DNA from: Klebsormidium nitens
Lineage: Eukaryota > Plantae > Klebsormidiophyceae
Assembly: GCA_000708835.1 (NCBI GenBank)
Contig: DF237340.1
Span: 1 to 64,000, forward strand
DNA length: 64,000 bases
Direction of reading: 5' to 3'
The notes under the pieces are model-generated. The model was not told the origin of the DNA, ran no database searches, and saw only the letters and a list, made by a program, of their open reading frames with translations. Made by a program: the position numbers and the translations under genes. Of this stretch, positions 746 through 26,611 are shown piece after piece (the stretch's first letter is position 1; the number at the start of each line of letters is the position of its first letter).

Positions 746-749
746 GGTC
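746..749. other. Left target-site duplication GGTC of element 1
   Basis: attagGGTC|TGCCGTG; identical 4-mer at 16746-16749. Confidence 0.85.
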
Positions 750-877
750 TGCCGTGCGCTACTCGGCTACTGCCGGTCCTCATGGGGTCCGGCGTTACGC
801 ACCGTAGATTGGCTCAGACCCAAAGCTAGGACAAATTAAAAGTCCCCCTTCAGCTATTCCATACAAGCCGTTCCACT
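750..877 (-). repeat. Element 1 repeat B2 (128 bp, 3'-terminal)
   Basis: Direct repeat of 1453-1580 with 1 mismatch (acaAatt/acaGatt). Confidence 0.97.
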
Positions 878-1450
878 AGCAACCATGCACAGGTTCTACA
901 GGACATGATGGGCAAAGGGATAGCTGGTTTGGTACTCGCTTATAACCTCTCAAGCATTACACATGCCCGGTGATTCCTCATGCTCATGTTGCTTCGGCTC
1001 CAACAAAGCCACATGCTCCGGCTCGCTCATGCTATCCTCACCATGCAATTGGCCGACAGGATCGCCACGCTCGCACGCAATGCTGTTGAATCAGGCTCAG
1101 AGAAGAGGAAGCTCGGGCGCCATTTGCTTGAATCAAGAGAGAGACTTGCAACTTTAGGAATGACACATCCGGTCGCAAAGTTCGCACCTAGTGTCACTCT
1201 AACCGTGCTGCACTAGCCTAGTCTCAGACTACTGTACAGCCTAAGCCCTAGCTCCGGCTAGTCTCGTTATGGTTTGAACTCGGCCGATGGTGACATTTGG
1301 CGCGGTTCCTCCGGCAAGCCTAGCCTAGTGTACATCAAATATAGGATATACTCTAGGCTATAGCCTATGTCTGCCGGGCCTTCCTACGCTGCTCCGGCCG
1401 CGGGTGCGCGCGCGCCGCGTCCTCCGGCACGCCGCTGGTCCGGCATGGCA
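878..1450 (-). repeat. Element 1 repeat A2 (573 bp)
   Basis: Direct repeat of 16173-16745 (offset 15295), about 10 mismatches counted by eye. Confidence 0.97.
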
Positions 1451-1452
1451 GC

Positions 1453-1580
1453 TGCCGTGCGCTACTCGGCTACTGCCGGTCCTCATGGGGTCCGGCGTTA
1501 CGCACCGTAGATTGGCTCAGACCCAAAGCTAGGACAGATTAAAAGTCCCCCTTCAGCTATTCCATACAAGCCGTTCCACT
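1453..1580 (-). repeat. Element 1 repeat B1 (128 bp), abutting the PPT
   Basis: Copy of 750-877, separated from A2 by a GC dinucleotide (1451-1452). Confidence 0.97.
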
Positions 1581-1592
1581 TCCCCCCCACTC
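1581..1592 (-). promoter_or_regulatory. Polypurine tract (plus-strand primer site) of element 1
   Basis: Sense GAGTGGGGGGGA, just after the INT-PHD stop and directly abutting B1. Confidence 0.8.
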
Positions 1593-1623: not shown

Positions 1624-2148
1624 TTATCCTTGCTGCGCGCCTTCCGCGCAGCTGGGGCACAACCATACTCCGGCCGGTACTTCCTTGACCGCCAGCTCCA
1701 AACACCCCATGTGGTACCCGTCCATACAGTAGTCACACAACAGCATGGCTCCCTGTCGGTTTGGGCTCTTGCACACTTGACAGACATGGCCCGCCGTCAC
1801 CGTGGTTAGGGTGGGATCGACCGCGGTGTCGATGTTGGGGTTATGGCACGGCGCGCAGTTCTCCAGGTGCTCTTTGAACAGGGTTCCGTCTGCCCCCTGC
1901 AACACCAACCGCCCGTTGGCCCCCACTTGGTAGACTTTGTAAGCCCCCCGCGTCACCGCGACGTCCGTCTTGTCCAGAGGAGCTCGCCGGAGGTAGACCA
2001 AGTCCCCGACTTCAAACTTCGGCTGGAACCTCGTCTTCCGGACGTGTTCGTACCGTCGTTGGTCTCGTTTCTGCGCCGCCAACAGGTTCCCCAGGGCTAA
2101 GGGGATCTCCCGCCGGAGGACTTCCGCCCGCTGCTCGCACGCCGTCGC
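1624..2148 (-). pseudogene. pol: Integrase C-terminus (SH3-like region) plus PHD finger, element 1
   Basis: FQPKFEVGDLVYLRR...; PHD CQVC...LLCDYC..GYHMGCL....VPAGVWLCPSC. In frame with 2149..4230 but separated by a TAG at 2149-2151. Confidence 0.9.
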
Positions 2149-4230
2149 CTACGTCTCTGGATCGTCGAAGTCCATCGGCTCTCCCACCAGTTGTTTAACC
2201 GCCTCGCCGGTGAGCATGGGATGCCGGCCGTAGAGGAGGTAGTAAGGGGAGTAGCCGTTGAGGGCGGTTTGGGGACTCATCCGGTACCCCATGGCGAGGT
2301 AGGGCAGCCACTCATCCCAGTTGCGCCGGTCGGCGTCGGTGCCGATTTTGGTTACCCCTTGGATGATGGAGTAGACCAACCGCTCCGTCAGCCCGTTGGC
2401 CTGGGGGTGGTAGCGCGATGTAGTCCGGTGGTCGAGGTAGAGCTTCTGGCAGAGGGTGTCGAACTCCCCCTCGAACTCCTTCCCGTTGTCCGTGAGGACT
2501 TCTGCGCATGCCCCAAATCGTGTTAGTATGCCAAGGAAAACCTCTGCCACCTTTGCTGAGTGTTTGCTCGGCAGGGCCACCAGCTCGCACCATTTGGAGA
2601 AGTGCTCGACGATGACCAAGACGAACCGCTTCTTTGTCCGCGTCATCAGCAGCGGGCCCGCGAAGTCGAGACTCCACCGGTAGCCTTGCCCCATGATTGG
2701 TAGACTCTGCATCCCCGACATCTTGACGTTGAGGCTCGCTTTGGTGCGTTCGCACTGTGGGCAGCTGGAGACGCCGTGGCTCACCGTGTCGTACATCCCC
2801 GGCCACCAGTATGCTCGCCGGAGGAGCTGCGCCGTGCGCTTCTCCCCCCAGTGGCCCGTGTAGTCGTGGATTTTCCGAACCACATTCAACCGCTCCGACG
2901 GTTCTGGCACAACGCGCTCTTCCCCCCCTGCCAGACGGCGGAGGAGGACGTCCTTGGATGCGGTTTCTGTTTCAACCCCCTCCTGGAGTCTGTGGAACGT
3001 TACCCCGCTGGCGAACCGGTAGGACGCTGCCCGGGCGCGAACCCGTCGTTCCTCCGGCTTACCCCAGGTTTCGCGGAGCCGGCCGGTGTTAAGGAACTCG
3101 AGGGTGTGCGCGTCTTCCCAGATGTCTGTGCGCGCGCGCGCCTGGTTCCCCCCCAGATCGCCGTCCGCCGGAACAGGGAGGTTTGTGTCCACCGCTCCGT
3201 AGTCGCTGGGGCCCGGGATGGGGAGTTCCGACGGCAGGTTCTCGTAGTCGTGGGTTCCCGGCTCGTAGACCTCCCCCCCGGCTTCTTCCATACTCAGGGG
3301 CTCGGCCCCCTCTCGAGGTTCTGTGGCCTCGCTGGCCTGCCAGGCTAGCAAGGCCGATGGTCTTGTCCCCCCCCCAGCCGCTTCCTCCCCGGCCGCCGGA
3401 GGATCCTCGTGGACTCGGGCGCCGGTTAAGTCGTCGGTCTCGGGCAGAGGGCTCCGGCTCAGGCCATCGGCGTTCATGTTGATGAGGCCCTTGCGGTACT
3501 TGACCTCGAACTCGAATTCCTGCAGCATCAACGCCCATCTTGCGTGCATGCCGGTTAAGTTTGGGCTTGTCATGAGCCACTCAAGTGGCCGATGATCAGT
3601 GTAGAGGATGAACTTCCGTCCATACAAGTACACTCGGAAGTACCTCACACCCCAGACTGCCGCCAAGCATTCTCCGGCGTAACTGCTATAGTTACTTTCT
3701 GCCCGGTTGTTGCTCCGGCTGGCATAAGCAACCACTCTCTCCTCCCCAGCATCATCTCGCTGTTGCAGAATGGCACCGCACCCAGCGGCACTCCAGTCTG
3801 TGTGCAACTCGTAGTCACGGGAGGGGTCGGGTCTCACCAGAAGTGGCGCGCTTGTCAGCATCGTCTTCGGGGAATCCACCGCCGTCTTGCACTCCTCCAG
3901 CAGGTCTCCTAGGAAATCCACATCCTTTTTTAGCAAGTCGTTTAGCGGCCGTGCCACTGCGCTACACCCCTTTAGGAACTTCCGGTAGTAGTTCACTATG
4001 CCCAGGAACTGCTTAACCGCCGTCACACTGGTGGGGTAGGGGATGCGCTGAATGGCCTCCACTTTGACCGCTCCGGGGTTTGAGACCGACTGGGTTGACC
4101 AAGTGCCCAAGAAAGGGAATCTCGGGGAAGAGAATGCGGATTTTCCGCGGGTGTACCTTGATGTTGTGCCGCCGTAGCTCCTGGAACACGGCCCGCAGCG
4201 CCGCCAGGTGGTCGGTGAAGCCACGCGCAT
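2149..4230 (-). pseudogene. pol: RT connection, RNase H and integrase core, element 1
   Basis: RH: ELHTDWS..., GECLAAVW, LYTDHRPL. INT: HDYTGHWG..CPQC, then WSLDFAGP / LTDNGKEF / NGLTER (D,D,E). Frameshifted relative to RT near 4070. Confidence 0.93.
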
Positions 4231-5398
4231 GGACGCTGATGTCGTCGATGAAAGCGCGCGCCACCTTCCGCAGCTGCCGCAGGACCCGGTCCATCAGCCG
4301 CTGGAACAGCGCCGGCGCGTTCTTGGGCCCGAAGGGGGTCCGCAGGGGCATGTAGATGTCGTCGTGCCCCCAGAACGCCAGCTTCCACTCGTCCCCCTCC
4401 CTGATGCGGATTTGATGGTAGCCCATCCGCAGGTCCAGGGTGGAAAAGCAGTCGCTCCCCCCCAGGTCGTCAAACAGCTCGTCGGCCACCGGCATGGGGT
4501 ATTTGTCGGGGACGGTTTTGTCGTTGTGGGGCCGGTAGTCCCCGCACATGCGCCGCTCGGTCCAGTTTCCTTCGGCGTCCTTCTTGCGGGGCATGACCGT
4601 CGCTGCCACGAAGGGCTCTTTGACCCCCGGCGGCAGCTTCAACGGCGCGATCAGCTTGGCAGCCAGCCGCTCCTCAACGTAGGCCTTTAACAGCTCCGTC
4701 TCGTAGGGGGAGTACCGTCGGCGGGGGCTCCAGATGGGTTTGTCGTCCGTAAACTCCACCTCGAATTCCACCCCGTCGATCGCTGTGTCGCTGAGGTCGT
4801 AGATGGACCAGGCGAACACATCCGACATCTCCTCCAAGAGTTCCTTGACTGCCTCCCGTTGCTCCGGCTGTAGCCCCGGCCAAATCTGCTCGTCACCCCA
4901 CTCAAACGGTTTCTCCGACCCCTTTGCTCCGAATTGGCTCGCCCCTTTCTCTGCCGGTGCCTTCCCTGCCGCTTGCGCCTGCAGCTTTGGCACTATCTCT
5001 CTTCCTCCTTCGGCAAGTGACCGCAGCCCCTCTAGGCCACTCCCCTTACCGTCCTTTCCTTCAGCCTTGTTGTTGACCGGGTCAGGCTCCCGGCGTTGCT
5101 CTTGCGAGCCCTTGGTGGGCTCTCCTCCTGCGCCTTCCTCCGGCGCCGCCCGTCTTCCAGAGACTGCAACTCGCCCTAGGGACCCCCGGCCCCTCTCTCC
5201 TTCTCCTTCCGCAGCCGATGTGGCCTCTCCCCGCACTGATCCGTTCTCTGAAATTTCCGGGCTCCTACCGTTTTTACCGTTTTTCCCCTTCTGCCCCCCC
5301 CCCCAGCTGCGTGTAGACGCTCCGGCGGCGCGCCAGCTGAGTTGGCCTGTGGCGGTTTTGTTGAGGATGACCCGCCTGAACACCCTTAGTGCGGGGGC
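4013..5398 (-). pseudogene. pol: Reverse transcriptase, element 1
   Basis: RRMCGDYRPHN, PDKYPMP, FSTLDLRMGYHQI, PFGPKNAPALFQRLM, AFIDDI. Confidence 0.93.
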
Positions 5399-5418: not shown

Positions 5419-8400
5419 TCAATCTTCATCGTAGTTGAGGACCCGCCAGCGGCGGATCTCCTTGCACAACCAATAGAAAGCGCGAACGTCAATCGCTGCT
5501 CCCACCAACCTCCGGCGGTTGGCTTCGGTCAACCCTGGTGCCGCGGTTGACCCTGGAATGAGGCCCATTATCCGCTCTCGTTCGTTGGCGTTGGGCTCAT
5601 CCCACTCCCGCTTGTTGCGGTCGTATCTCATGCCAGGCCCGGGGCGATCAGGCCCCTGGAAACGGAAGGCGTATGAACCAGGCGTTGCGACGAGGGTGGG
5701 GAAGACGCGGATTGGCTCACCGGCGACGTTCATCGGAAAGTAACCCCGAACCCTTGGGTCGTCCTCCAGGGCACTCTGCACCGTGAGGAAGGGCTCCAGC
5801 ACGTCCCTGGCTTCAACCTTGTTCATCGCTTGACCGCAATCGTACTCGTCGTAGCGAGCCTGAATCAGGGGTCCCGGCGCTAAGTTAGTCCAGAAGGTGC
5901 GCACCCTGTGAGCCGCAGAACCCAACTTAGCCGCGTCAATCAGAATTCCCTGCCCTGGTTGTCCCCCGCAGATGGCGTCCAGCTGCTCAAACCCCCACCG
6001 CGCGGGTGGAGAGGGGTGGTCACTTGCGTCGACCATCTCGAAGATGAAGCCCACGTCAAACCCCCATGGACGTTGGATTTGCTGAAGCGTGTCCAAGATG
6101 CGCCAAGCCTCAACGATCAGGCCTGACCGATCATCTTCCAACCCCAAAGCTTGGCGGTTGGCGCGGGAGAAGCCTTGGCAGGGGGAGGAGATAGTTACCA
6201 GATTGATGGGGTCTTGGCACTCGGAGCCGACGGCCCGCCGAAGCTCCCGCTCGCCCACCTCCCGGATGTCCCACGGCATGGAAGACTGCGTGGTGTGGAA
6301 CGCCTGGGGGCCCAGCTGCTCCGGGTATCGGTGGTGCAGATCCCGCAGCCTGGTGCCGAAGGCGATGCGCGCCCCCGGGTCGTTCTCCACGTAGAACAGC
6401 CGCTTGATGTAGAGGCCCGCCCGCAGGAGGCCCTTCAACTCCGCGCCAATGCCGCCGAAGAGCAGCATGACGGTGATGTACAGGCCCTCCGCAAAGATGG
6501 GGCTGAACGTGGGGACGCTGTTGAGCCCCACCGTCTCCCGGTAGTAGGCGGTGCGGCTGCCGATAACGCTCAGCTCCTGGCCCACCGGCGGTTGCGTAAG
6601 CAGGCCCTGGGGAAGGCCGTCCCAGGGTGCGTCGGCGGCCGGAGGGACCCCGTCCTCCAGGGCGTCGGGATCCGCCTCGGCCACCGGAGCTATCTCGTCC
6701 TCCCCGACCTCCACCACTGGGGGCTCCCTCCGGCGCTGATTCTGCATTAGAAGGAGATCGTCCATCTGGGGGAAATCCCTGTTTCGGAAGTTCCCGATCC
6801 GTTCCCAGTTGCGCTCCATCCAGAACTGCTCCTCCAGGGAGCGAGGATGGACAGCCAGGAACTCGTACAGCTCGCGGTAGTAGATGTGGCTGGTCTGCAG
6901 TCGGTAGTCCCAGCCCGGGGGTGGCTCCGGCCGCCCCCACTCATCCTGCCGACGCATGTAGTTGAGCGCCGGAGGAGGGTAGCCCTCTAGGCTACCCCAC
7001 AGGGGTGACACCCCATGCACCAACTCTCTGTGTGCCACCTCCTGGGGGTCAACTGGTCCCGCCGGATCAGGGATGCCCGCAAGTAGCTTAGAGAGGTGGG
7101 TGTGGCAACTGACCAGGGTCCGCTTGAACGCCGGCTGGAAGCCCCGTCGTTCTTCCCTGCTGACCACCAGGCCAGGGCGCGCCAGCAGGTACCGCGGAGT
7201 GTCCACCGAGTGCTGCATGTCGTTGCGGGTCTGGCGCCGGAGGCACGTCACGATGTTCCGCACGTGCACCGAGTTGTGGCGCTGCGCAGCGCCGTTCGCC
7301 ATAACCTGCTCCAAACGTCGTGCGGTGGAGTCAGCTTCTCCACCACTGAGGCCCAAGCGCGCCGCCCTAGGGCAGACCTGCACCATGTCCTCTAGCCTTA
7401 AGGCCCTCCTTTCCCGTACACTCCAGTCTAACGCCTGGTGTAGCTGGGCCTCCCAACTGCGCACTGACTCCATCACCGCGAACTCCTCGTTGTGAAAGTC
7501 CAGCCACGCCAAGTACACCAGGATGAGGGTGTAGATTTGGGCCAGCTCCCGACGGCGCTGAACCATCTCGGGATGCCACTCCGGCAACTTCCACTGCCCA
7601 AACAGAGAGTCCTCCAAGTCCGTTGCAAGCCGGTGAAGTCGCGCCCTCTCCTCGTCCCAGTTAGAGCGGCTCACCGCGGAGCGCCCAACTTGGCCCGTCG
7701 CGATGTACTCCAACCACCAGATCCACCGCTCGTCCATTGGGTATGGGGCCACGAAGCGGAAGTCGGGGTCGTCCCTGTAGTAAACCCCATGCCACCCTTC
7801 ATGCTCCACCGCCACTACCGGCGCTGGGTCCCCCAGCCGCTCCAGCTCCATCTGCCCGACGGGTTCTAAGTCGGGCAGGCTGTCGGGCGTGCTGCTCCGG
7901 CTACTGTCAGGGCTGGCCATCTCGAGGAAGTCTGGCAGCTCGTTCAGGTCTGGGATGCTCCCCGCCGAAGAAACTACCCCGCTCTCATCCTCCGAAACTA
8001 AATCCGGCAGGCTTTCCAGTGGGGTGGGGGCCCGCTGCGGCCCGTACACTCTCCATCTGTCTACCCCCCCCTGGCGGAGGAGCATGGAGTTGTAGAATAC
8101 TTGGGGCATGTGCCGTGCCCCGGTTTCTCGCTCATACCGGATGGGTATGAAGCCTTCGGTATTTCCGGCGCCCTGTGGCCCTTCCCGCCAATGGAGCCGG
8201 TACCGGAACTGCTCTCGCCAGGCATCGACAATGCCGCCCAAAGTCCAGAGGACGACATTGCCCACCAGAAAGTCGTACGGTGCGGCCGTGATGACCGCGC
8301 GTACCTTCAGGACGGTGTCGGTTTTTGTCCCGGGGTTGAACCGGAACACCAGGGGCTCGCGTGTGACGCCGAACATCGCCGACACTTTGTCGTCAGCCAA

Positions 8401-9069
8401 GCCCAGGCGCACGGCGTCCTTGATGACGTCATCGTCTGTGAGGCCGAGCTGGGCTACCCCGGGTTTGCCGACGAGGAGGGGCATGGCGCCGGTGTCGAGG
8501 ATGGCGACCCCACGCAGGGGCTTGCCGTTGATCAACACCTCGCTCCTCGTGTTGTGGAAGATGGGGGCGCGCACGCGCTCGCGCGCCCGGTTCCCGCGGT
8601 ACGCTGGTAGGTTGCGTACCTTCTCCACCAGTGTTGCCCGTGCCGCCGGCTCCAACAGCTCCAGGATGGGGTCGAGGTTGCAGGGGCACATGGCTGAGTA
8701 GGCTTCCACCGGCATGGCGATGCTTGCGCCGGTGCTGTGGACGGGCGCCGTGGGCTGAGGGGTGCCGGCGCTGCCATGTTGGGAGGCTGGGGCGTTCTGT
8801 GCAGGGGCTGCCCGGCCCGCCGGAGGAAGTTCCACACTTGGCCCGGACCCCCCTGAAGGGTGACCGGGCCCAGACCCCGGGTCGTCATCCTTGGGGTCCC
8901 GCTGGGGCTGAACTCCCGGGTGCTCGTCCGGCGGGGGAATCCCGTACTGCCTCTTCCTCAGTTCTTCCTCACCGGGTTCCGGGGAGGAGGGCGGGGTTTG
9001 GGCGCCAGGTGTGCGACGGATAGTCGCCTCCTGCAAGACGTCCTGGAATTTCTTGAGGTGTTCTGGCCC
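5419..9069 (-). CDS. Aspartic protease, unknown ~550-aa region and C5 cytosine DNA methyltransferase, element 1
   Basis: PR: AILDTGAMPLLVG (~8470-8520). DNMT ~5419-6490: I LLFGGIG, II YVEND, IV SSPCQGFS, VI FEMV, VIII HRVRTFW, IX ERERIMG, X RRLVGAAID. In frame with 9070..10932 across a TGA. Confidence 0.88.
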   Translation of the reverse strand, partial: GPEHLKKFQDVLQEATIRRTPGAQTPPSSPEPGEEELRKRQYGIPPPDEHPGVQPQRDPKDDDPGSGPGHPSGGSGPSVELPPAGRAAPAQNAPASQHGSAGTPQPTAPVHSTGASIAMPVEAYSAMCPCNLDPILELLEPAARATLVEKVRNLPAYRGNRARERVRAPIFHNTRSEVLINGKPLRGVAILDTGAMPLLVGKPGVAQLGLTDDDVIKDAVRLGLADDKVSAMFGVTREPLVFRFNPGTKTDTVLKVRAVITAAPYDFLVGNVVLWTLGGIVDAWREQFRYRLHWREGPQGAGNTEGFIPIRYERETGARHMPQVFYNSMLLRQGGVDRWRVYGPQRAPTPLESLPDLVSEDESGVVSSAGSIPDLNELPDFLEMASPDSSRSSTPDSLPDLEPVGQMELERLGDPAPVVAVEHEGWHGVYYRDDPDFRFVAPYPMDERWIWWLEYIATGQVGRSAVSRSNWDEERARLHRLATDLEDSLFGQWKLPEWHPEMVQRRRELAQIYTLILVYLAWLDFHNEEFAVMESVRSWEAQLHQALDWSVRERRALRLEDMVQVCPRAARLGLSGGEADSTARRLEQVMANGAAQRHNSVHVRNIVTCLRRQTRNDMQHSVDTPRYLLARPGLVVSREERRGFQPAFKRTLVSCHTHLSKLLAGIPDPAGPVDPQEVAHRELVHGVSPLWGSLEGYPPPALNYMRRQDEWGRPEPPPGWDYRLQTSHIYYRELYEFLAVHPRSLEEQFWMERNWERIGNFRNRDFPQMDDLLLMQNQRRREPPVVEVGEDEIAPVAEADPDALEDGVPPAADAPWDGLPQGLLTQPPVGQELSVIGSRTAYYRETVGLNSVPTFSPIFAEGLYITVMLLFGGIGAELKGLLRAGLYIKRLFYVENDPGARIAFGTRLRDLHHRYPEQLGPQAFHTTQSSMPWDIREVGERELRRAVGSECQDPINLVTISSPCQGFSRANRQALGLEDDRSGLIVEAWRILDTLQQIQRPWGFDVGFIFEMVDASDHPSPPARWGFEQLDAICGGQPGQGILIDAAKLGSAAHRVRTFWTNLAPGPLIQARYDEYDCGQAMNKVEARDVLEPFLTVQSALEDDPRVRGYFPMNVAGEPIRVFPTLVATPGSYAFRFQGPDRPGPGMRYDRNKREWDEPNANERERIMGLIPGSTAAPGLTEANRRRLVGAAIDVRAFYWLCKEIRRWRVLNYDED

Positions 9070-11587: not shown

Positions 11588-14500
11588 TCAAAGGAATTGC
11601 ATTTTAGGGCGCTTGGGGGGAGGGGTTGGGGTGCGGGTGCGTTCCCCCCCCTTTTCCTCGCTGGATGACGGCGTGGCTTCCTCGTCGTCCTCATCCGGCG
11701 TAAGGTACCCCCCCAACTTGGCCAGCCCGGCCTTGGCGTTAAGCTTTTTGCGCGCTGATTCGAGGCGGGCGTGCTCTTGGTTTGCCGTTTCAGGGCTCGC
11801 CTGCGCCAGTTTGAGCAACAGGTTATCGACGTTCTCCTCCAGCTCCCGCACCTCGATCCGAATCACTGATACGTCGAAAATCTCCACACCAGGCTCAAAG
11901 GTTAGGATGGGGCCCTCCTCCGGCGCCTTCCTCAGCCGGGCCTCCAGCTTCCTGGCCCGCCGGAGGACCTCCTTGCTCCCGTTGACACCCTCAATCGCCC
12001 CGGCTTGACGCAAAGAGCTGGCCAGCTTCCTGAGGCCGTCGATGCGCACCTGCTCGCCGGTGGGGTCGAGTCGAAGGGTGGGTGGAGGCTCCACACTGCG
12101 GGACCGCTGTCGCTGTTGGTGTCCTGTTGACAGCTCTCCGGCGCCCTCGTCCGCTGGGTCGTTCTTGGCCCGCCGTGGACGCTTGGTTTGGGGGCTGGCT
12201 GACCGGGCGCGCCGTTCTTCTCCGGCCACCTGTCGCTTCTCCCGCCCCGACCGCCGCGCCAGGATGGGCTTGTCCTCGCCCTCGCTGGCCTTACCGCCCA
12301 GGCCCTTCCGGCTTGCGGTTGGAGAAGGCTTGGAGGCACCGCCCCCTTTTGTCTCCTTGGGGCCCGGTTGCTTCGGCCGAGGGGGTGCGCCGATTGGCAC
12401 CACCCGTGGGAGATTTTCCCCTTTCACGTGGGTGGGGGCGGGGGACACGCGCTTGTCGGGCTCCGTGGAGTGCCCCCCCCACTGCCCGTGTGGCACGTCG
12501 TAGTCGTCGACCTTCCAAGTTTCCCGGTAGGTGGTGTCCTCCCGGTCGTCATCGTCGCGCACATACTTCTGGTACGCGTAGAGGGGGTCCGTCCCCCAGG
12601 CAGCGTACAGATTGGCCTTGTACTGTCCCCACGGGATGACGCGCCCCCTGTTGTGGGTGTCGCCCTTCTTCAGCTCAAGCTCCTCCTCCGGCAGGGGGCC
12701 CACCTGGATAGGCGTGTTGTCGTCCCAGCCACCGTGCCACGCGTGGAGGAGTCGCCGGTGGAACAGCACCATCTCAGACAGGTCCGGCTTGGGCGGGGCC
12801 TTCTTGGACGCTGGCCGCCCGTGCAGCTCGCGGCAGTACTCAAGGATGGACCGACCCGCATAGTGCAGGGCCAGCAGGACGTAGCATTGCGTCCTGGTGG
12901 GCCGCTTGGCGAACATGAACTCCGCTGCCCGCGTGACGTACTCCCGGCCCCAGTGGGTTATGTAGCCCGCGAACTCGTCGTTGTGCATGACGGCCCAGGA
13001 TTGTCGCTCCCGCCAGTCTCGTGGACTCCAGCACATGCACCTGAAATCCGGGTGCCAAGGAGGGTGACCGGTTTTGCCCCCTTGGAGGCCGGCCTTGCTC
13101 TCGTCCTGGGCTGCGTGCGCCAGCATGTAGTTCAGGTGCTGGATGAACGCCATCTGCCCCTTGTACCGCGGGGCCTGCATCGGGGGCAGGTAGATGTCCA
13201 GTTTGTGCGGGGGGAGATGCGGGTCGTCGTCCACCACCGGGTCGGGGTACTCCTCCATGGCCCAGGTGTGGTTGTCGGCGTGGGTGGGATCGGCTGCGGC
13301 CAACCACTGATCCTTGAACGGACCAGCGACGATGTTGAACCAGTTTTCGCCGAGGGTTATGACGTCGTCAAACTTGCTGATGACGGTCTCTCCTCCCTGT
13401 GCTCCGCCAGCTCCTCCGGCCGCACCGCCTGCTTCTTCCTCCGGCTCGTCCTCGCCTGACTGCTCCACTGACCCCGAGCCCGCCTGCTCGGACTCCTCCT
13501 CCACGCTCTCACGCTCCGAGTCATCCGCCTCCCCCTCCGCGTCTTCGTCTCCCTCCTCGACGCCGGGCTGCTCCACATCCTCGGGGTCATCTTCGTCCCC
13601 CTCGCCGTCGTCATCGTCAGCTCCGCCAACGCAGCGCATGGGCTTCGCAGGACCGAGGTAGGACAGGGGGATGGAGGACGCTTGGACCTCCAGACTGTAG
13701 GCCGGAGGAAGGGTCTCGAACGGGGCTGCCCGTTTAACCTGCACCTCCCGTTGGGGCCCGACCTTGGGGTCATTCAGCATGTGGACCTGCACCCCTGCGT
13801 TCTCGAGGGACTCGATCCCCTGATAGCGGGGGTCGTTGGGGGAATACTCCCCAAAGGAAGGGGGCAGCTTCTGGGCGACCAGGGGCGTTGGCTCAGGCTC
13901 GGCGGGGCCTTCGGCTTCCTCCGGCTCAGCTCTGGTCTCCCCCCCGGCCTCCTCAGCTGCTGCGACAGGGCGATCGCCATGTGGGCGGAAGGCTGGGGGT
14001 GGGCCGCCCTTCCGCAGACGATCCTCCTTGGCTCTGGCCGCCAGCCGGTCCTTCTCCCCGCGTGCCCGCGGTGCCGTGGTTGTCTCGCGCTGCGCCTTGG
14101 TTGACGCGCGCACCTCCGGCAGCTCGTGGTCTTCGTCCGCCAGGTAGACGCCCATGTAGGGGACGCCTGGCTGCTCGATGACGGCCGACCACGCCAGCTC
14201 AGGGTCGAACTCCTCCGTGGCTGGCGCGTTGTGCTCCACCGCATCGGCGGCGTAGGCATGCTTGGGGGCTCCGCGGTTGCTCCGGCCGCCCGCACCAGGT
14301 TTGCCCTTGCCGCTGTCGCCGGACCCGCGCCACTTCTCCGGCCGCTTCTCGGGAATCGCCTCCCAGCACTCGTGGGACTCGTGGGAGTCCCTACGCTTGC
14401 AGTGCTTGCAGACCGCCCCTGGCATCCGCGGCCCCTTTGCCTCCGGCTTCTTCTTGCACTCCGTGCGTGTGTGGCCGTACTCGCCACAGTTGAAGCAGTT

Positions 14501-15714
14501 GCCCTTGAACCCCGTTCCCAGTGCCGGAGGCTCCATGGCGGCTAAGGCTTGCTTGGGTTTTCCCCGGCCTCGCCGCTCTCTCTCTTTGGGACCGCGTTCT
14601 GCTCGGGGTTTGTTGGACTCTCTCTGAGAGCCCGGGGACTTGCTGGAGAGGCTCAGGTCCTGCAATTTGGAGGAGAGGGGTTTGCCGGTGGTTTTGTCGG
14701 CCCGCTCCAGCTCACGTGCATGAAGAGCGTCCTCCACCTGCCTGGCCTCTTGCTCCAACTTGTCTAGGGTACAATCGGCAACAGCCCACTTGAGAACATC
14801 GTTCTCTATCGCACGCCGCACCTCCCCCCTAAGCGCTTTCAACGCTTTCTCAGTCACCTCCCTGCCGATGGTGGGCTTACCGTTCTTCCGGCAGAGCTCC
14901 CGCAAGAGGTGAAACGTGGCGTGAGTGCTCCTCCCCGCCGTGTACTTGAAGTTGAGGTATTCGCCCAGCGTCTGAGCGGTGTTCTCCGGATAGGTGGTCT
15001 GCAGGAAAGCCCAGGTTTCGGTCATGAGCGTGGGGTCCCCCTTTGCTACCTTCCGTGGCCAGGAAGGCACTGGGCCTGGCGGCGCGTCCGTGTTCGCCTT
15101 CCACTGCTCATGCCACTTCTCTGCGAGAAGTTTCTCCTCTACCTTCCGGTTTTCAGCCTCCACTTCCTCCCGCGCCTTCGCATTCTCTTCCAGACGCGTA
15201 CGGAATTTATCCTGGAGAACGTGGTATGCGTCCCCCTCACAAAGATCACTGCAAACTTGTCTTCATCAGTGAGAGTGGCCGCCGTAGCACTGCGGCGAGA
15301 CCGGATAAGCTGCAGGCGATTCTCATAAGTGAGCCGGAGGTCTGTGACACTCTGGCCCCCTACACGCCCACTAAACTTTCCACCGAAGCTCCCTGTGGAG
15401 CTACCCCCTGTCTCCTCCATATCCCAGCTGTCTTCCCAGTCCTCAACTCCTAAGAAGGAGACTGCTACGGCCGGAAGCACAACAGTGTTGCCCTGCTCCT
15501 CTGCCGATTCCGACGCACTGGTGGAAAGAGGGGTTTCAGGGATGATCTCACCAGCTGGGTTTTCTTCAGGTGAACCTTGACCACCCTCGGATGTCTCCGC
15601 TGCCGCCGTGGACTGTCCCTCACCCTTCGCTCCCTGCCCAAACCTCCGAAGAAAGTAAGGCGGGTCCCCTTCAGCCCCGCTGCTTTCCGCTGGCTGATCA
15701 GAGGGAGGCTGCAT
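11588..15714 (-). pseudogene. gag: Gag with zinc knuckles plus long C-terminal extension, element 1
   Basis: ATG at 15714. Probable 1-bp loss in a G run near 15232 joins ORFs 15139..15720 and 11588..15163. Knuckles CFNCGEYGHTRTEC and CKHCKRRDSHESHEC. Confidence 0.82.
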
Positions 15715-16152: not shown

Positions 16153-16172
16153 TCATTCCTAAAGTTGCAAGT
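16153..16172 (-). promoter_or_regulatory. Primer-binding-site position, self-complementary to A repeat (not a recognisable tRNA PBS)
   Basis: Abuts A1. Perfect 20-bp reverse complement of 16439-16458 (also 1144-1163). Confidence 0.8.
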
Positions 16173-16745
16173 AGCAACCATGCACAGGTTCTACAGGACA
16201 TGATGGGCAAAGGGATAGCTGGTTTGGTACTCGCTTATAACCTCTCAAGCATTACACATGCCCGGTGATTCCTCATGCTCATGTTGCTTCGGCTCCAACA
16301 AAGCCACATGCTCCGGCTCGCTCATGCTATCCTCACCATGCAATTGGCCGACAGGATCGCCACGCTCGCACGCAATGCTGTTGAATCAGGCTCAGAGAGA
16401 AGGAAGCTCGGGCGCCATTTGCTTGAATCAAGAGAGAGACTTGCAACTTTAGGAATGACACATCCGGTCGCAAAGTTCGCACCTAGTGTCACTCTAACAG
16501 TACTGCACTAGCCTAGTCTCAGACCCTTGTACAGCCTAAGCCCTAGCTCTGGCTAGTCTCGTCATGGTTTGAACTCGGCCGATGGTGACATTTGGCGCGG
16601 TTCCTCCGGCAAGCCTAGCCTAGTGTACATCGAATATAGGATATACTCTAGGCTATAGCCTATGTCTGCCGGGCCTTCCTACGCTGCTCCGGCCGCGGGT
16701 GCGCGCGCGCCGCGTCCTCCGGCACGCCGCTGGTCCGGCATGGCA
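16173..16745 (-). repeat. Element 1 repeat A1 (573 bp, 5'-terminal)
   Basis: Direct repeat of 878-1450. No B sequence on either side. Confidence 0.97.
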
Positions 16746-16749
16746 GGTC
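16746..16749. other. Right target-site duplication GGTC of element 1
   Basis: CATGGCA|GGTCattg; matches 746-749. Confidence 0.85.
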
Positions 16750-17277: not shown

Positions 17278-18578
17278 GGTATCATACCCCCGGCGCAAGG
17301 CGTGTTTGACAGTCTGTAATTTCTTACTTGAGAGCGCACCTGCTTACGACTCGTGACTAACTCCCGTGGTGTTGCTATGTGATTTAGTTGTGCTAACTTC
17401 CCCCACACTTACAACTCTGTCACCATTGACGTTACCACGCCTGTACCGCCTGTGAAGTGCACCAAGACGGCGCTGGATTACCTAGACTACTTGACTACGT
17501 CGTCGCTAGAGGTAGGTCTTCCATCACAGTTTCTTATCTGAGTACTGTCTGCCCGAGTGTTGACTTTAGCTCAGTGACGTTGCCCCAGTTGCTGTCTGTG
17601 CACTGTGCACCTCCGCCAGTCAGTTGCTGCACCTCTGTCAGTTGTTGTGTTGTATCTTGCCAGCACGCCGTCAGTCGGTTTCGATCTCTGCCTACTTTGT
17701 GAGTGGCTGACCTTGGTATGTGACTCAAAGGTAAACGATCCTGAACCCGGTTCGTTTGACGCGGCCAGCAATATTAGTTGACGCATGTTAACCGCTAGTT
17801 CTCGACCGTTCATCTAGCTCGTAGTTTGCAGGGGAACGAGGCCTGTGGATGTCCTCTTAAATCGCAGCGAGTCTGTGTTCGGAGGGTGTCCCGTCTCAAT
17901 CCACCTTTGCTTGTGATAGGACAATAGCGATCTGCTCAGCTGCAGTCCGATTGTCATAGTCCAGAAAGTCGCACTCATACAGTGACGCTTTCTGCAGAGC
18001 TGTTGGAGCGTTTCGAGTAGTGATACCTTCTGGTGCCCCTTCCGGCGGCCAGTGGTCCGTGAGTTGGAGAGTCAGGGGCCCCACGGTCCTTAACTACGCT
18101 GGACAGCCAGACCCTCAGTCGGTGCTGCGCTACACAGGTAGGCCCTCCAAGCACGCTTTCCGACATAAGGTGCTCTTTGCGACCTTCGTAGTTATTCGAA
18201 AGTTGGCAGCGACCAACTCAGGAAGCTTCGAGTCTACCACCAGGTTCAACGAAGTTCCTTATTTTTGATTGGTGCTCTCTGAAGTGATCGATCATTGACA
18301 AGTGCTTCAGTAGCGACTTTGTCTTTACAGCTTGGGTTCAATTACAGCCCTGCTCAAAAAACCGGTAACGAGACCGTTTTCTTACCTGCGCGTGTCCCAG
18401 AGTCTGACACTCTGACGGGACTGACCCTTGCGCGCTGTTGACTTGCAGATTCTCTTGCTCACAACCGCGGAGACCGTGGTTTCCCGCACGGGGGGAGAAG
18501 GAATCTGACGTGGCGGCCCGTGGCCCCACTAGTTAATGTTGGTTTCGGGTAGTTAGCGAATTTGGCACCTTCTCGTTC

Positions 18579-19523
18579 ATGAGTTGGAGATACAATTTGC
18601 GTAGCGGTCCTGAGTTTCCACACCGCGACCCGAACGTCGGACTTGGCAGTGACACTGGCCTTGATAACATTGATTATAACCAAGGCAGTAGTTCGAGTCC
18701 GACCCCTCATTCGCCGCGCGAATTATTGCACGATTCCGGGCACTCTGATTTTGCACCGCAGCTTGTGCGTGCATCATACTTGCCGACAGGCGCGCCCGCC
18801 TTTGTCGAGCCGTTTGATATAGCCGAATTAGACACCATGTCGCTACTGAATGTACAGCATGGTACATGACTCTTTACGGGACTCCCGGACGGCCCAAGTA
18901 TCTTGCACTTGCGCCAGAATTATGCGACGCTCAAGACGGAGCTCAAGCTCAAGCCGAATTCTGAGCTTATCAACGATAATGACAGGTTCAACCTGCTCAT
19001 GAAGTTCTTAGCCGGGGGGGCACGCGATCAGGCCGCCCACCTCGAGCGTGAGATGCGCGAAGAACTGCGCACCCGGAATGCTGCTCAGGCCGACTTATAT
19101 CTGCGGAATAAGACGGCATATGAGAAGGCGAAGACCGATTATGACGCTCTGTCAGCCGAAGCTAAGGCAGCCGCGACCGAACCGGTCCGGCCGGAGCCGC
19201 ATGTGGACGCAGAGGTCTATGATCAGCCGGTCGAGAAGTTCTGGGCTATGATGGAAAAGCTTTATCCAGAGAAGTCAACGACTCGGATGGATGAGTTCCG
19301 CTATTTTGCGCGACGCTCCGAGGAGACTATCGCTAGCCTCGTACAGCGCATGCAGTCATTGAAGCATGCCCTCGACCGCCCAGAGGAGATGGCCGTATTC
19401 AAGCTCATAGGAGCTATGCCCCGCCACTTGGGCGAGGAAGTTACGCGCCAGTTGAACGCCACAGCCATGGAGCCTGAGGAATGGACCATTGAGCTCGTGG
19501 GCCGGGTTGCAATTAAGCCTTGA
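18579..19523 (+). pseudogene. gag: Gag capsid region, element 2
   Basis: ORFs 18579..18869 and 18903..19523 are in the same frame, split by a TGA. Helical gag-like sequence, frameshifted into the CCHC ORF near 19520. Confidence 0.7.
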
Positions 19524-21579
19524 CCGCGCCACGACTCAGGCCAGCCTGTGGACGACCAATATGCAGCCGAAGGCTGCGCAGCCGCGCCATGCAACCGCAC
19601 AGCCAGCGCCGACTGCAAGGCCGAATGGCCGCAGGCAGGAGGGCCCCCATGATCATGCACACCCCAAGCACGATCATCGGGCCATCATATGCCACAACTG
19701 CGGAGAGGCGGGTCACAAACGGCCCCAGTACACTAAGCCGCTTATGGTTCGGGGAGCTTCGGCTCGCACCGACGCCAGAGCAGGCTCTAAGGATCCGAAA
19801 GGGGTTCAGTGCTGGCACTGCCTACAGTACGGCCACATGGCCGCGCAGTGCACAGACAAGCAAGCCGAGGTCTCTCGACCTGGCGCCCCCAAGATGTGGT
19901 GCGATATCCACAAGCTGGATTCGCATACCACTGCTGATTGCCGAGCCGCCCCGCGCGCCAAGAGCGCCAGGCCGGCCGCTGCCCGGGCTGCTCAGGCACC
20001 CGCTAAGGACGATCGGGGTTTGCCCGAACCTACCCTGGCACAGCTCAAGGAGCTTTGGGAGGCTCATCACAACCCAAATGCCTACAAGGCCACGATTGTT
20101 CCTGCACTTGGCGCCCATGTAGCACCGGTGCACTCACGACTTACCAAGAGAATTGTGGACAAGGATGAGAGGCTCAGAGGGCCGTTGGACAATATGCAGC
20201 TCAACTTCATCCCAAGGGACTTCCTGCGCGAGCCGCACAGGCCGCCGCCTGGAATGATGACGGTACCTGAGGGTATGGTGCCTGTCCTCGAAGCCGAGCC
20301 GGATGCGCGCACTGCGCCAGAGCCTGTTCACCCTGAGCTGGTACCAGTTGAGATTGCTCCTGGTCCGACCAACGACCAGGCTGTGCTGCCGTCCCTTGAG
20401 ACGCCGCCGCCTGCGCCTAATACTGTCACTGATGACACACTGCCCGCCAGCTTCACTGAGCTGCCGGCAGATGCACCCGCGCGCCAGGGCATGGTGTACG
20501 CACCAAGTGTGCCACAGCCCGCGCTGACACCTGAGCAGGAGACTGCGCCGACGCGCCGAGGCAAGCCTCGGGCCGCGCTTGCTACCTCTCAGGACTTGTA
20601 CAATCCAGAGAACCCGAACATTAGTGCGCTGCTCAGCCACTTGCCAGGAAGCTATCACAGCGACCAAACGGCCGGGTTCCACCGCTCGCCGCGCATTGAC
20701 AACTCAGGGCTGAAGCCTGCGATGCTGATCAATGGGCGCGCGCTGAACAACTTGCTGCTGGACAGCGGAGCCGAGGCCGCAGGTCGCTCGGGCGCTGCCG
20801 CTATGGGTATCACACCCGACGTGATCGCTCCGAATGCTATCATGATCCGCACCGCTACCGGTAACTTGACCGAGCGGTTGGATCGAACGAAGGAGCCAGT
20901 CAGCTTTGTGCTGAACCCTAGTACCGCCGACGAAGTCACTGTCACGGCGCATGTGGTTATTGTAAACCAGCAGGCCGCCGACACACTGATCGGTATGAGT
21001 ATCATTGGACCCGTGGGTCTTGATCCCAGCTTCAGGAAGAAGCGCGTCAAATACTACCTTGAAGGAGATGGACAAGCGCCCCGCAAGTGCTTCTTGCGCG
21101 CCAAGTTTCCAGTCGATTACGATTCTCCCTTCGCCAATCCAGGCGGCCAGGTGCTTCAAGCCCTCGTCGGCACTGTGATATCTCGGATTCCGAGCCCGCG
21201 CAATGCGCAAGACATTGAGTTCGCTCGCAGCCGCATCGCAACCTTTCAGGCAAAGGCTCTGCCAAAGATCACTGATATCTTTGACCGAAGCATGCGCGTG
21301 CTAGCCACTCCAGACAGGGCCCCTCCTAAGATTCGGAACCCTGCATACCAGCACCTGCGGCCCCTGAGCCAAAACCTGGTTGACCTGAAAGACAAGCTGG
21401 CCACACCTGGACCAGGCTTGGTGGTCTTGGAGCTGTTCTCCGGCCTCATGGCCACAACCGAAGCGCTGTGGCGCCAAGGGATTACCGTTCGCAAAGTCTA
21501 TGCATGCGAACTGGACGCGAAGACCAGAAAGATCGCCATGAGGCGACTGGCCGTCCTGCATACGCTTTATCCTCAGCTG
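19489..21579 (+). pseudogene. Gag zinc knuckles, aspartic protease and DNMT N-terminus, element 2
   Basis: CHNCGEAGHKRPQY, CWHCLQYGHMAAQC, CDIHKLDSHTTADC; PR LLLDSGAE; DNMT motif I VLELFSGL, motif II VYACELD. Confidence 0.85.
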
Positions 21580-22459
21580 NNNNNNNNNNNNNNNNNNNNN
21601 NNNNNNNNNNNNNNNNNNNNNNNNNNNNNNNNNNNNNNNNNNNNNNNNNNNNNNNNNNNNNNNNNNNNNNNNNNNNNNNNNNNNNNNNNNNNNNNNNNNN
21701 NNNNNNNNNNNNNNNNNNNNNNNNNNNNNNNNNNNNNNNNNNNNNNNNNNNNNNNNNNNNNNNNNNNNNNNNNNNNNNNNNNNNNNNNNNNNNNNNNNNN
21801 NNNNNNNNNNNNNNNNNNNNNNNNNNNNNNNNNNNNNNNNNNNNNNNNNNNNNNNNNNNNNNNNNNNNNNNNNNNNNNNNNNNNNNNNNNNNNNNNNNNN
21901 NNNNNNNNNNNNNNNNNNNNNNNNNNNNNNNNNNNNNNNNNNNNNNNNNNNNNNNNNNNNNNNNNNNNNNNNNNNNNNNNNNNNNNNNNNNNNNNNNNNN
22001 NNNNNNNNNNNNNNNNNNNNNNNNNNNNNNNNNNNNNNNNNNNNNNNNNNNNNNNNNNNNNNNNNNNNNNNNNNNNNNNNNNNNNNNNNNNNNNNNNNNN
22101 NNNNNNNNNNNNNNNNNNNNNNNNNNNNNNNNNNNNNNNNNNNNNNNNNNNNNNNNNNNNNNNNNNNNNNNNNNNNNNNNNNNNNNNNNNNNNNNNNNNN
22201 NNNNNNNNNNNNNNNNNNNNNNNNNNNNNNNNNNNNNNNNNNNNNNNNNNNNNNNNNNNNNNNNNNNNNNNNNNNNNNNNNNNNNNNNNNNNNNNNNNNN
22301 NNNNNNNNNNNNNNNNNNNNNNNNNNNNNNNNNNNNNNNNNNNNNNNNNNNNNNNNNNNNNNNNNNNNNNNNNNNNNNNNNNNNNNNNNNNNNNNNNNNN
22401 NNNNNNNNNNNNNNNNNNNNNNNNNNNNNNNNNNNNNNNNNNNNNNNNNNNNNNNNNNN
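21580..22459. other. Assembly gap (880 N)
   Basis: Run of N. Confidence 1.
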
Positions 22460-22669
22460 ATGATCCAGAAAGCTGATGGCTCTTGGGATGAACCCACCGC
22501 TCTGGAACGCGAGCGCGCTATGGGCTTCATGGACGGGACCACTCACGTCTGTCCCTCCATCTCTGAGGCGGATCGGCGACGGATCCTGGGAAGCACGATG
22601 GACATGCACAGCCTCCACTTTCTGGTTGGCAGCATCCACTGCTTCCAGGCAGCCTTTTTCACCGATTGA
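22460..22669 (+). pseudogene. DNMT C-terminus (motifs IX-X), element 2
   Basis: WDEPTALERERAMGF...EADRRRILGSTMD aligns with element 1 WDEPNANERERIMGL...EANRRRLVGAAID. Confidence 0.88.
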
Positions 22670-22950
22670 CGGTTTGCCCGGCGCAACGAACTCGAGTCAG
22701 AGCGTTGTGACCGAATAGACGACGGCACTGTTACGCCAGAACGAGTTGCCAAGTTCGTGCAAGATGGCCTGCTGCGCCACCGCAAGCTGCGCACCCCTGC
22801 TGACCCTAGCACAGCCTCAGGAATTTCACTTGAGCTAGGGGGGGAAGAGTAGGAACGCCGTCAGAAGGAACGGCTCCGAGGGAACCTCCAGAATCGAGGC
22901 CTTCGAGTAAAATTCGGGAGAACGCTTCTTGCGAGAAGACCCTGAATGAG

Positions 22951-24207
22951 ATGCCGTCTGAGTCAGCCCTGAAAGAGGGGCATCAGGACGAAGATGGGAA
23001 GAAAGCTAGCCGCTTGAACGGCAAGCCTCTGCATGATCCTCTGGAGAAAGCTACCGAGAAGCAGCCCCAGAGTGAGAATAGGCACACCGCGCAGGAGAAT
23101 GCACCCAAAGTGGAGCCCCTGAACGCGCCTCTGGAGAAAGCTTCTGAGTCGAAGCCCCAAGGGAAGCCTCCGGAGAAAGTTCCAAAAAACGGATTCCCTC
23201 CGGCCCAGAACGGCGAGCCATCGCCTGTTGTGGCAGACCCCGATGATGAAACACCGCCTCTCGTCGATGATGAGGACGAGTTCGAACCGGATGATGAACC
23301 GCCGCCCCTCGTCGCTGAGGAGGACGCGTTCGAAACCGAGTGGGACATGGGGGATCACCTTACTCCTTACCAGAAGCGCGAGCTTCAGAATCTTTTGGAC
23401 GAATTCCATGACGTGTTTGCACGCAGCATGTCAGAGATGACGACCGTCCGGGGGGAGAAGTTCTCAATCCCGGTCACTAACGATACGCCGATCTTCCGGC
23501 ATCAGTATCGGTTGTCACAATCGGAGAAGGAGAGTCTGAATGAGCACATTGAGGAACGCATCAAGTGCGGATTCATTCGACCGTCCTCGTCCCCATGGGC
23601 CTTTCCCACAACCATGCCTCCTAAGAAGGATGAGCACGGTAACTGGACGCTTAAACGGCCATGCGGAGACTATCGCGAGCTGAACAAAGTCAGCGTCACG
23701 GATCACTACCCGTTGCCCACGCCTGAAGAGATCTTTGATCAACTCCAGAGCGCCACGTGGTTTACCACGTTGGACCTTCGTTGGGGCTATCACCAGGTCG
23801 CTATCGATGAGAAGGACTATTGCAAGACAGCTTTCTGGGGACCTCGGGGACTCTATGAACGGGTCGTGATGCCGTTCGGCCTGAAGAACGCCCCGGCCTT
23901 CTTTCAGCGCATGCTGGATACCACCTTGCGGGCTCAGTTCGAGTTCTGCCGCTGCTACATTGATGACCTGATCATCTTCAGCAAGTCGTTCGACGAGCAC
24001 TTGGTGCACTTGCGAGCGGTCTTTGAGCAGCTGCACCGCAAACGGATTCGGTGTCATCCGCCGAAGAAGATGAGGCTAGCCGTGTCAGATGTCGAGTACC
24101 TGGGCCACTTCGTGGTACCCAACGGTACCGCACCGCAGCAGGCGAAGGTTGAGGCCATCGTCAAGATGCAGGCACCACATGACATGCCCACGCTGCGCGC
24201 CTCTTAG
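22951..24207 (+). pseudogene. pol: Reverse transcriptase, element 2
   Basis: RPCGDYRELN, DHYPLP, FTTLDLRWGYHQV, MPFGLKNAPAFFQRM, CYIDDL. Frameshift near 24200. Confidence 0.93.
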
Positions 24208-24233
24208 GCACTGCCGGCTATTATCGGCGCTAT

Positions 24234-26403: not shown

Positions 26404-26466
26404 GGCGTGTTGGCATGTACCACACTGTGACTCCCTGGTTTCCGCTCAGTCGGGACGACTTCGCCC

Positions 26467-26480
26467 AGTAGGGGGGAGGG
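26467..26480 (+). promoter_or_regulatory. Polypurine tract of element 2
   Basis: AGTAGGGGGGAGGG, downstream of the PHD stop and abutting B1. Confidence 0.8.
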
Positions 26481-26609
26481 ATCATAGATGATGTGTATGA
26501 TGCATATGAGTGACATGAGATGCCATGTATTTTTCTTTCAGCCGAGTGCGCCGAGACTTGTCGGGTATGTTATCGACATGTTACCGCAACGACCCAGGAC
26601 CGCGTGACA
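26478..26609 (+). repeat. Element 2 repeat B1 (~132 bp; start +/-3)
   Basis: Direct repeat of 27174-27306 with a few mismatches and one indel; ends GTGACA followed by GC-TGTCATGC. Confidence 0.95.
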
Positions 26610-26611
26610 GC

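What the first reader, a model, noticed from the sequence alone, without database searches (positions are those of the whole stretch)
865..890. A2|B2 junction looks like an exact end-to-end join of the PBS-defined and PPT-defined cDNA ends
Seen: B1 stops exactly at the PPT (ttccact|tccccccc) and A1 stops exactly at the PBS (gcaagt|agcaacc). At 877/878 these two ends are fused with no added or lost bases (ttccact|agcaacc). Neither end carries TG/CA (sense ends are AGTGG... and ...GTTGCT), so a linear cDNA would lack integrase attachment sites. Inference: this is a fixed LTR-LTR circle junction, independent support for the circle model.
Basis: partly seen in the sequence, partly recalled or inferred. 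Interest (0 to 1): 0.75.

Follow-up and report, generated by a model that had tools for sequence, protein, structure and literature searches.

The report
Fossil LTR-LTR junction, permuted Gypsy element
In a 16-kb Gypsy-type jumping gene of the alga Klebsormidium nitens, the point at 877/878 is where the two ends of the reverse-transcribed DNA copy were joined before an ordinary integrase cut the joined form at a palindrome inside the repeat and pasted it in. That makes an end-joined copy, usually seen as a dead end, the likely integration substrate.

Summary
On the minus strand lies a decayed 16-kb Ty3/gypsy element (RT, RNase H, DDE integrase plus PHD finger, no tyrosine recombinase) laid out as A1-PBS-internal-PPT-B1-GC-A2-B2. 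A stops where a 20-nt self-priming PBS starts. B starts where the G7A polypurine tract ends. At 877/878 the A end abuts the B start, with one base (T on +, A in sense) that could belong to either side.

They are TG...CA with a 4-bp target duplication (GGTC), and they lie at a conserved palindrome GGCA|GC|TGCC, which is also the internal B1|A2 boundary.

Five other elements show the same layout: element 2 of this window, one more K. nitens scaffold, two ENA contigs and one JGI contig. One has its own 4-bp duplication (TGAA).

The best reading is that full-length cDNA ends were joined, as a circle or head to tail, and integrase then cut the internal palindrome. Untemplated versus templated joining stays open, because no second copy of this family was reachable. 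One related family carries one more A at the junction.

The repeat layout was noted without explanation in a 2018 figure legend. This scan has flagged it repeatedly on other DNA of this genome.

The parts
746..749 (.). Target-site duplication GGTC, copy next to B2
   Evidence: Same four bases at 16746-16749, directly outside the TG...CA ends
750..877 (-). B2, the second copy of repeat B (128 nt). Its sense 3' end ...GCACGGCA is the right integrated end
   Evidence: 127/128 identical to B1
865..890 (-). A2|B2 junction at 877/878 (sense ...GGTTGCT|AGTGGAA...): the PBS-defined end joined to the PPT-defined end, with one ambiguous base at 877
878..1450 (-). A2, the second copy of repeat A (573 nt). 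It holds the predicted R start (self-primer) at 1144-1163
   Evidence: 563/573 identical to A1, no gaps
1447..1456 (.). Perfect palindrome GGCA|GC|TGCC at the B1|A2 boundary, the proposed integrase cleavage (att) site. The GC at 1451-1452 is present only here, not at the integrated ends
   Evidence: Conserved as ...RCA|GC|TGYC... in all six elements
1453..1580 (-). B1, the first copy of repeat B, starting right after the polypurine tract
1581..1588 (-). Polypurine tract (sense GGGGGGGA)
   Evidence: The homologous GCGAGTGGGGGGGA is found in relatives L001, L002, L003 and L020
1589..16152 (-). Internal region with decayed genes: zf-CCHC gag-like ORF 11591-15163, ORF with a weak C5-methylase hit 5422-9036, RT 4016-5383, RNase H plus DDE integrase 2152-4230, PHD finger 1627-2082. 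Pol is broken into several ORFs
16153..16172 (-). Primer-binding site (sense ACTTGCAACTTTAGGAATGA), perfectly complementary to a 20-nt site inside A (Tf1-like self-priming)
   Evidence: Equivalent 19-nt pairs in L002, L003, L020, L026 and L030
16173..16745 (-). A1, the first copy of repeat A. Its sense 5' end TGCCATGCC is the left integrated end
16746..16749 (.). Target-site duplication GGTC, copy next to A1

Best explanation
The 877/878 point is a preserved U5-end|U3-start junction.

Step 1. Reverse transcription of this Ty3/gypsy element is primed at the self-priming PBS and at the G7A polypurine tract. It should yield a linear cDNA with two full LTRs, each reading B-GC-A, whose tips (AGTGG... 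and ...GTTGCT) are not integrase sites.

Step 2. The two tips are then joined, giving a 2-LTR circle or a head-to-tail multimer.

Step 3. The element's DDE integrase cuts after CA on both strands of the palindrome ...GGCA|GC|TGCC... that lies 128 nt inside the LTR, in the LTR copy next to the PBS. This gives a linear A-PBS-internal-PPT-B-GC-A-B molecule with recessed CA-3'OH ends.

Step 4. That molecule is inserted with a 4-bp stagger.

Shown here: the repeat layout, the position of PBS and PPT at the junction, the TG...CA ends, the 4-bp duplications, and conservation of the palindrome across families.

Inferred: the joining step, its chemistry (most likely host end-joining, with no template), and cleavage of the palindrome by integrase.

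On this reading B2 and the junction are not copied into the next generation. They would be remade at each insertion.
For: Enzymes: RVT_1, RT_RNaseH, Integrase_H2C2, rve and PHD are present, with no tyrosine recombinase.

Boundaries: the A end abuts a 20-nt perfect self-complement, and the B start abuts G7A.

Integrated ends: TG...CA with GGTC at 746-749 and 16746-16749. A second complete element, L030/L028, has TG...CA with TGAA on both sides.

The palindrome pattern GRCAGCTGYC occurs only twice in 64 kb, both times at a B1|A2 boundary.

Six elements share PPT|B...CA|GC|TG... and A|B, then flank straight after CA. They are el1, el2, L001/L026, L028/L030, L033 and L035, at 45-74% pol identity for those listed. 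They come from two K. nitens scaffolds, two ENA samples and one JGI sample.

The terminal approximately 9 bp at the palindrome are conserved, while the PPT- and PBS-defined tips are not.

In the three elements with both ends read, the A2 end equals the A1 end up to the PBS, and the B2 start equals the B1 start from the PPT.

Precedent: foamy-virus and HIV-1 integrases cleave a palindromic LTR-LTR junction in 2-LTR circles (PMC1180852, PMC1905944).
Against: No extrachromosomal form, transcript map or enzyme assay is available here.

A 2-LTR circle carries two identical palindromes. Random choice between them predicts as many A-B-A-internal-B insertions as the form seen. I saw none in six elements, though my sampling started from pol and its 3' side and is biased.

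The junction is ambiguous by one base.

One related family (L028) has two A's where el1 and L001 have one. This shows the join is not rule-exact across families and could equally be an inherited indel.

No second copy of the el1 family was found, so junction variation within a family is untested.
Confidence: 0.62

Rival explanations
1. Templated (DIRS/PAT-like) route. The genomic RNA includes A2|B2, and the junction is copied from the parent each cycle, acting as a bridge that lets reverse transcriptase make the permuted or circular DNA without ligation.
For: The repeat layout A1-int-B1-A2-B2 is the one described for PAT-like/Ngaro/DIRS elements, and was called DIRS-like for KnitGypsy-Dnmt3 (PMC5890265). 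The junction is clean in all elements seen.
Against: A PBS and a PPT sit exactly at the two sides of the junction, which already fixes the cDNA tips there by the standard LTR mechanism. No template is then needed to define the ends, and none is known for DDE-integrase elements. Target duplications and TG...CA ends point to integrase, not recombinase, chemistry.
Confidence: 0.13
2. The same end-joining happens between molecules. Linear cDNAs are joined head to tail, and integrase cuts the palindromes of two successive 5' LTRs, releasing A-int-B-A-B without a monomeric circle.
For: It gives the identical product and junction. It also explains why only the productive permutation is seen, if the integrase pairs two separate sites in direct order.
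Against: It needs two cDNAs in one place. A palindrome suggests symmetric cleavage at one site, as shown for retroviral circle junctions (PMC1180852).
Confidence: 0.18
3. Secondary rearrangement or assembly artefact. A normal LTR-int-LTR element next to a solo LTR lost parts of the outer repeats, or repeats were mis-joined in the draft assembly.
For: The scaffold is a draft with N runs. Metagenome contigs L002, L003 and L020 show collapsed int-B-A-int paths.
Against: Both truncations would have to fall exactly at the same palindrome in six elements from independent assemblies. The outer ends are also bracketed by 4-bp duplications in both elements where both flanks are known.
Confidence: 0.03

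Closest known systems
KnitGypsy-Dnmt3 of Klebsormidium nitens (de Mendoza et al. 2018, PMC5890265)
   Same: Same species, a Gypsy-type pol, and the same repeat layout. The Fig. 4c legend says the structure of repeats is that of a DIRS element while the domains are Gypsy. Relative L035 carries a DNA_methylase domain. el1 has a weak hit.
   Different: The paper gives no account of PBS, PPT, the junction, the palindrome, target duplications or any mechanism. The methylase hit of el1 is below Pfam's cut-off.
Retroviral 2-LTR circles cleaved by integrase at the palindromic LTR-LTR junction (PFV, HIV-1; PMC1180852, PMC1905944)
   Same: U5 end joined to U3 start. Integrase acts on a palindrome to regenerate processed CA ends.
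   Different: In retroviruses the palindrome is the junction itself, so cutting restores the normal linear form. Here the palindrome is 128 nt away, inside the LTR. The junction therefore survives in the integrated copy and the repeats end up permuted. This is not a virus of animals.
PAT-like / Ngaro / DIRS retrotransposons with split direct repeats
   Same: A1-internal-B1-A2-B2 layout, formally a two-repeat circle opened inside a repeat.
   Different: Those encode a tyrosine recombinase and make no target duplication. This element has a DDE integrase, TG...CA ends and a 4-bp duplication.
Tf1/sushi-type self-priming Ty3/gypsy elements
   Same: A PBS complementary to a site inside the LTR rather than to a tRNA.
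   Different: Tf1 has ordinary paired LTRs. The transcript start here is only predicted.

Membership tests
Ty3/gypsy (Metaviridae) LTR retrotransposon | pol order RT - RNase H - DDE integrase | tested here: met
   RVT_1 E=1e-23, RT_RNaseH E=5e-35, Integrase_H2C2 E=7e-17 and rve E=1e-9, in that order on the minus strand
Ty3/gypsy (Metaviridae) LTR retrotransposon | Two equal direct LTRs bracketing the internal region | tested here: not met
   The 5' side has A only. The 3' side has B-GC-A-B
Ty3/gypsy (Metaviridae) LTR retrotransposon | TG...CA integrated ends with a 4-6 bp target duplication | tested here: met
   TG at the A1 start and CA at the B2 end, with GGTC on both sides. TGAA in L030/L028
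Ty3/gypsy (Metaviridae) LTR retrotransposon | PBS after the 5' repeat and PPT before the 3' repeat | tested here: met
   20-nt PBS at 16153-16172 abuts A1. G7A at 1581-1588 abuts B1
DIRS / PAT-like / Ngaro | Tyrosine recombinase gene | tested here: not met
   No Phage_integrase hit in any of seven minus-strand ORFs that tile the internal region (150 aa or more)
DIRS / PAT-like / Ngaro | Split direct repeats A1-int-B1-A2-B2 | tested here: met
DIRS / PAT-like / Ngaro | Insertion without target duplication | tested here: not met
   4-bp duplications in both elements with two flanks
Tf1-like self-priming elements | PBS pairs with the 5' end of the element's own transcript | tested here: inconclusive
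   The 20/20 complementarity is present, and 19-nt equivalents exist in relatives. The transcript start is not mapped
KnitGypsy-Dnmt3 | Dnmt3-type methyltransferase domain within a Gypsy element of K. nitens | tested here: inconclusive
   DNA_methylase scores 19.0 bits against a cut-off of 22 in ORF 5422-9036. The species is confirmed as K. nitens scaffold DF237340.1
Retroviral-type 2-LTR circle junction | U5 end directly joined to U3 start | tested here: met
   The A end (next to the PBS) abuts the B start (next to the PPT), with one ambiguous base
Retroviral-type 2-LTR circle junction | The junction itself is the palindromic integrase substrate | tested here: not met
   The junction GGTTGCT|AGTGGAA is not palindromic. 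The palindrome lies at B1|A2, 128 nt from the B start

The most novel reading that the evidence does not exclude
A whole clade of green-lineage Gypsy elements has moved its integrase sites from the cDNA tips to a palindrome inside U3. An end-joined cDNA (a 2-LTR circle or its equivalent) would then be the obligatory integration substrate rather than a dead end. Every genomic copy would also carry an unselected fossil of one end-joining event at A2|B2.
Probability: 0.5. Interest if true: 0.8.

Novelty: new variant of a known kind. Interest (0 to 1): 0.6.

Why it matters
Joined LTR-LTR forms of retroelement DNA are generally treated as by-products that cannot integrate. These elements are built so that only a joined form places both integrase sites around a complete genome. 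That would make them a natural system for asking how circles or concatemers are made and re-opened.

If B2 and the junction are remade at each insertion, the A2|B2 points across a genome record the end-joining fidelity of the host, and they are free of selection.

The finding also shows that the 'split direct repeat' layout is not diagnostic of tyrosine-recombinase elements. This matters for transposon annotation.

Tried and rejected
1. Tyrosine-recombinase (DIRS/PAT) identity. Rejected: Pfam finds a DDE integrase and no recombinase, and target duplications are present.

2. Other copies of the el1 family.
- None in the window.
- The protein word searches gave at best 74% (pol) and one 94% hit on a 3-kb contig without ends.
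- The scan's own index gave nothing by sequence.
- Junction variation within the family therefore could not be tested.

3. A metagenome scan for the palindrome gave 22 loci. Only L020 has the PPT and self-priming PBS. The rest look like chance GC-rich matches.

4. L002, L003 and L020 show int-PPT-B-A-PBS-int. I read this as repeat collapse or chimeric paths in short-read assemblies, not as evidence for circles.

5. Element 2 of the window has no A1 within reach, and L033 and L035 run off their contigs at the 5' side. Only their PPT side and junction count.

6. One contig look-up failed because the called gene starts with GTG. L034 ends before the junction.

7. Literature searches for permuted or split LTRs in DDE elements found only the 2018 legend.

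Full report
**What is there**

The window is the first 64 kb of Klebsormidium nitens scaffold DF237340.1. A locus fetched through a K. nitens protein turned out to be the window itself.

A retroelement of about 16 kb lies on the minus strand between 750 and 16745. Seven minus-strand ORFs of 150 aa or more tile its internal region. In element order they give a zinc-knuckle gag-like protein, an ORF with a sub-threshold C5-methylase hit, RT, RNase H, an H2C2 zinc-binding domain plus rve integrase core, and a PHD finger. No tyrosine recombinase is found. Pol is split into several ORFs, so this copy is decayed. I describe the breaks only and built no repaired or consensus version.

**The repeats**

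Read in the element's sense, the order is A1 (16745 down to 16173), PBS, internal region, PPT, B1 (1580 down to 1453), GC, A2 (1450 down to 878), B2 (877 down to 750).

- A1 and A2 match at 563 of 573 positions without gaps.
- B1 and B2 match at 127 of 128.

**The observation**

The junction 14-mer is unique in the window.

- B1 begins directly after the sense tract GGGGGGGA.
- At 877/878 the A end meets the B start.

One base is shared by all three contexts: T on the plus strand at 877, 1580 and 16172. The join is therefore exact only to within that one ambiguous nucleotide. It could be the first base of B, or a PBS-derived base kept at the U5 end, as happens in HIV-1 (my own knowledge). It could also be a 1-nt overlap used in joining.

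The integrated ends are perfectly ordinary integrase ends. The element starts with TG and ends with CA, and GGTC flanks it on both sides at 746-749 and 16746-16749.

These ends are the two halves of a palindrome, GGCA|GC|TGCC. It is intact only at the internal B1|A2 boundary (1447-1456). The pattern GRCAGCTGYC occurs just twice in 64 kb. Both occurrences are at a B1|A2 boundary, the second in a different element on the plus strand.

So the repeat that reverse transcription should make is B-GC-A, from the PPT to the PBS. The integrated copy is that structure circularly permuted at the palindrome.

**Relatives**

Pol relatives at 45-74% identity come from environmental assemblies and from K. nitens.

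| Element | Source | What it shows |
|---|---|---|
| L001/L026 | ENA contig | The whole unit and nothing else. Starts 4 nt inside A1 and ends at the CA of B2. PPT G7A\|AGTGC, A1\|PBS AATTC\|ACTTAC..., A2\|B2 AATTC\|AGTGC |
| L028/L030 | JGI contig | Complete, with both flanks. TG...CA ends and a TGAA duplication. A1\|PBS CACTTC\|ACTTGC..., A2\|B2 CACTTC\|AAGTAAA |
| L033 | second K. nitens scaffold | PPT\|B1, ...CA\|GC\|TG..., A2\|B2, then flank straight after CA. The 5' side is off the contig |
| L035 | ENA, methylase-bearing | Same 3' layout. The 5' side is off the contig |
| Element 2 | this window | Same 3' layout. No A1 within reach |

Across these six elements the approximately 9 terminal bases at the palindrome are conserved, while the PPT- and PBS-defined tips are not. 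Two independent 4-bp duplications have a chance probability of about 1 in 65,000. Together with the six concordant layouts, this rules out rearrangement or misassembly.

**One-base heterogeneity**

L028's own polypurine tract has decayed. Its close relative L020 shows the intact form G7AAGT, the same as in el1. The PBS also starts with A in both families.

Yet the junction has two A's in L028 and one in el1 and L001. The join therefore does not follow one fixed rule across families. This fits cDNA tips that vary by a base, as circle junctions of retroviruses do (my own knowledge). It could also be an inherited indel.

**Mechanism**

The PBS and PPT fix the cDNA tips at the A end and the B start. 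The conserved integrase sites are elsewhere. A molecule that has both sites around a full genome, and that still contains A|B, can arise only if the tips are first joined. The joined form is then opened at the palindrome of the LTR next to the PBS.

Cuts after CA on both strands, 2 nt apart, would give recessed CA-3'OH ends with GC overhangs. Insertion with a 4-bp stagger then gives what is seen, including the absence of GC at the outer ends.

Cleavage of a palindromic LTR-LTR junction by integrase is documented for foamy virus and HIV-1 (PMC1180852, PMC1905944). The difference is that in those viruses the palindrome is the junction itself.

Not shown here: the joining chemistry, whether the joined form is a circle or a multimer, and whether RNA ever spans A2|B2. 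A circle has two equal palindromes, so the other permutation (A-B-A-internal-B) is predicted. I did not see it, but my sampling was biased towards 3' ends.

**What is known**

The only mention I found is the Fig. 4c legend of de Mendoza et al. 2018. It says that KnitGypsy-Dnmt3 has the repeat structure of a DIRS element with Gypsy domains, and gives no explanation. Other searches found nothing on DDE elements with split or permuted LTRs.

This scan has flagged the same layout many times on other DNA of this genome. I treated those notes as leads and tested the points I use.

**Verdict**

The reading as an LTR-LTR junction is supported. 'Circle', 'fixed' and 'ligation' remain open. It is a new variant of a known kind, of real interest to retroelement specialists.

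Noticed in passing
window 17900-27306 (+): A second Gypsy element (PPT 26471-26477, B1 26478-26609, GC, A2 26612-27173, B2 27174-27306) lies head to head with element 1. Its pol is the annotated K. nitens 'putative retrotransposon protein'. It has an N gap at 21580-22459 and no A1 anywhere in the window, so its 5' end is missing or unlike its 3' repeat.
   Followed up: partly
window 5422-9036 (-) and 21400-21580 (+): Both elements carry a stretch with C5 cytosine methyltransferase similarity. It scores 19 bits in element 1, below Pfam's cut-off. Relative L035 has a clear DNA_methylase domain. This fits the published KnitGypsy-Dnmt3 group.
   Followed up: partly
window 1627-2082 (-): A PHD finger sits at the C-terminal end of the integrase region and is shared by nearly all close relatives. 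It could tether integration to a chromatin mark.
   Followed up: no
window 878-1450 vs 16173-16745: Eight of the ten A1/A2 differences lie in the part of A upstream of the predicted transcript start (the U3 part), and only two lie in the predicted R-U5 part of equal length. The numbers are too small to interpret.
   Followed up: no
L030 4870-4915 and L028 14877-14940: The insertion site of the JGI relative lies in a short repeated motif (gaacttgaaagttg...) that is present on both sides of the element, beyond the 4-bp duplication.
   Followed up: no
L002 1-688 vs 14745-15423: The two ends of this ENA contig overlap at only 94% identity. The int-LTR-int path therefore joins two different copies, rather than being a clean circle.
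   Followed up: no
window 51423-51655 vs 56362-56603: Two diverged direct repeats of about 55-58 nt lie roughly 4.9 kb apart in the A-rich right half of the window. They are unrelated to the finding.
   Followed up: no
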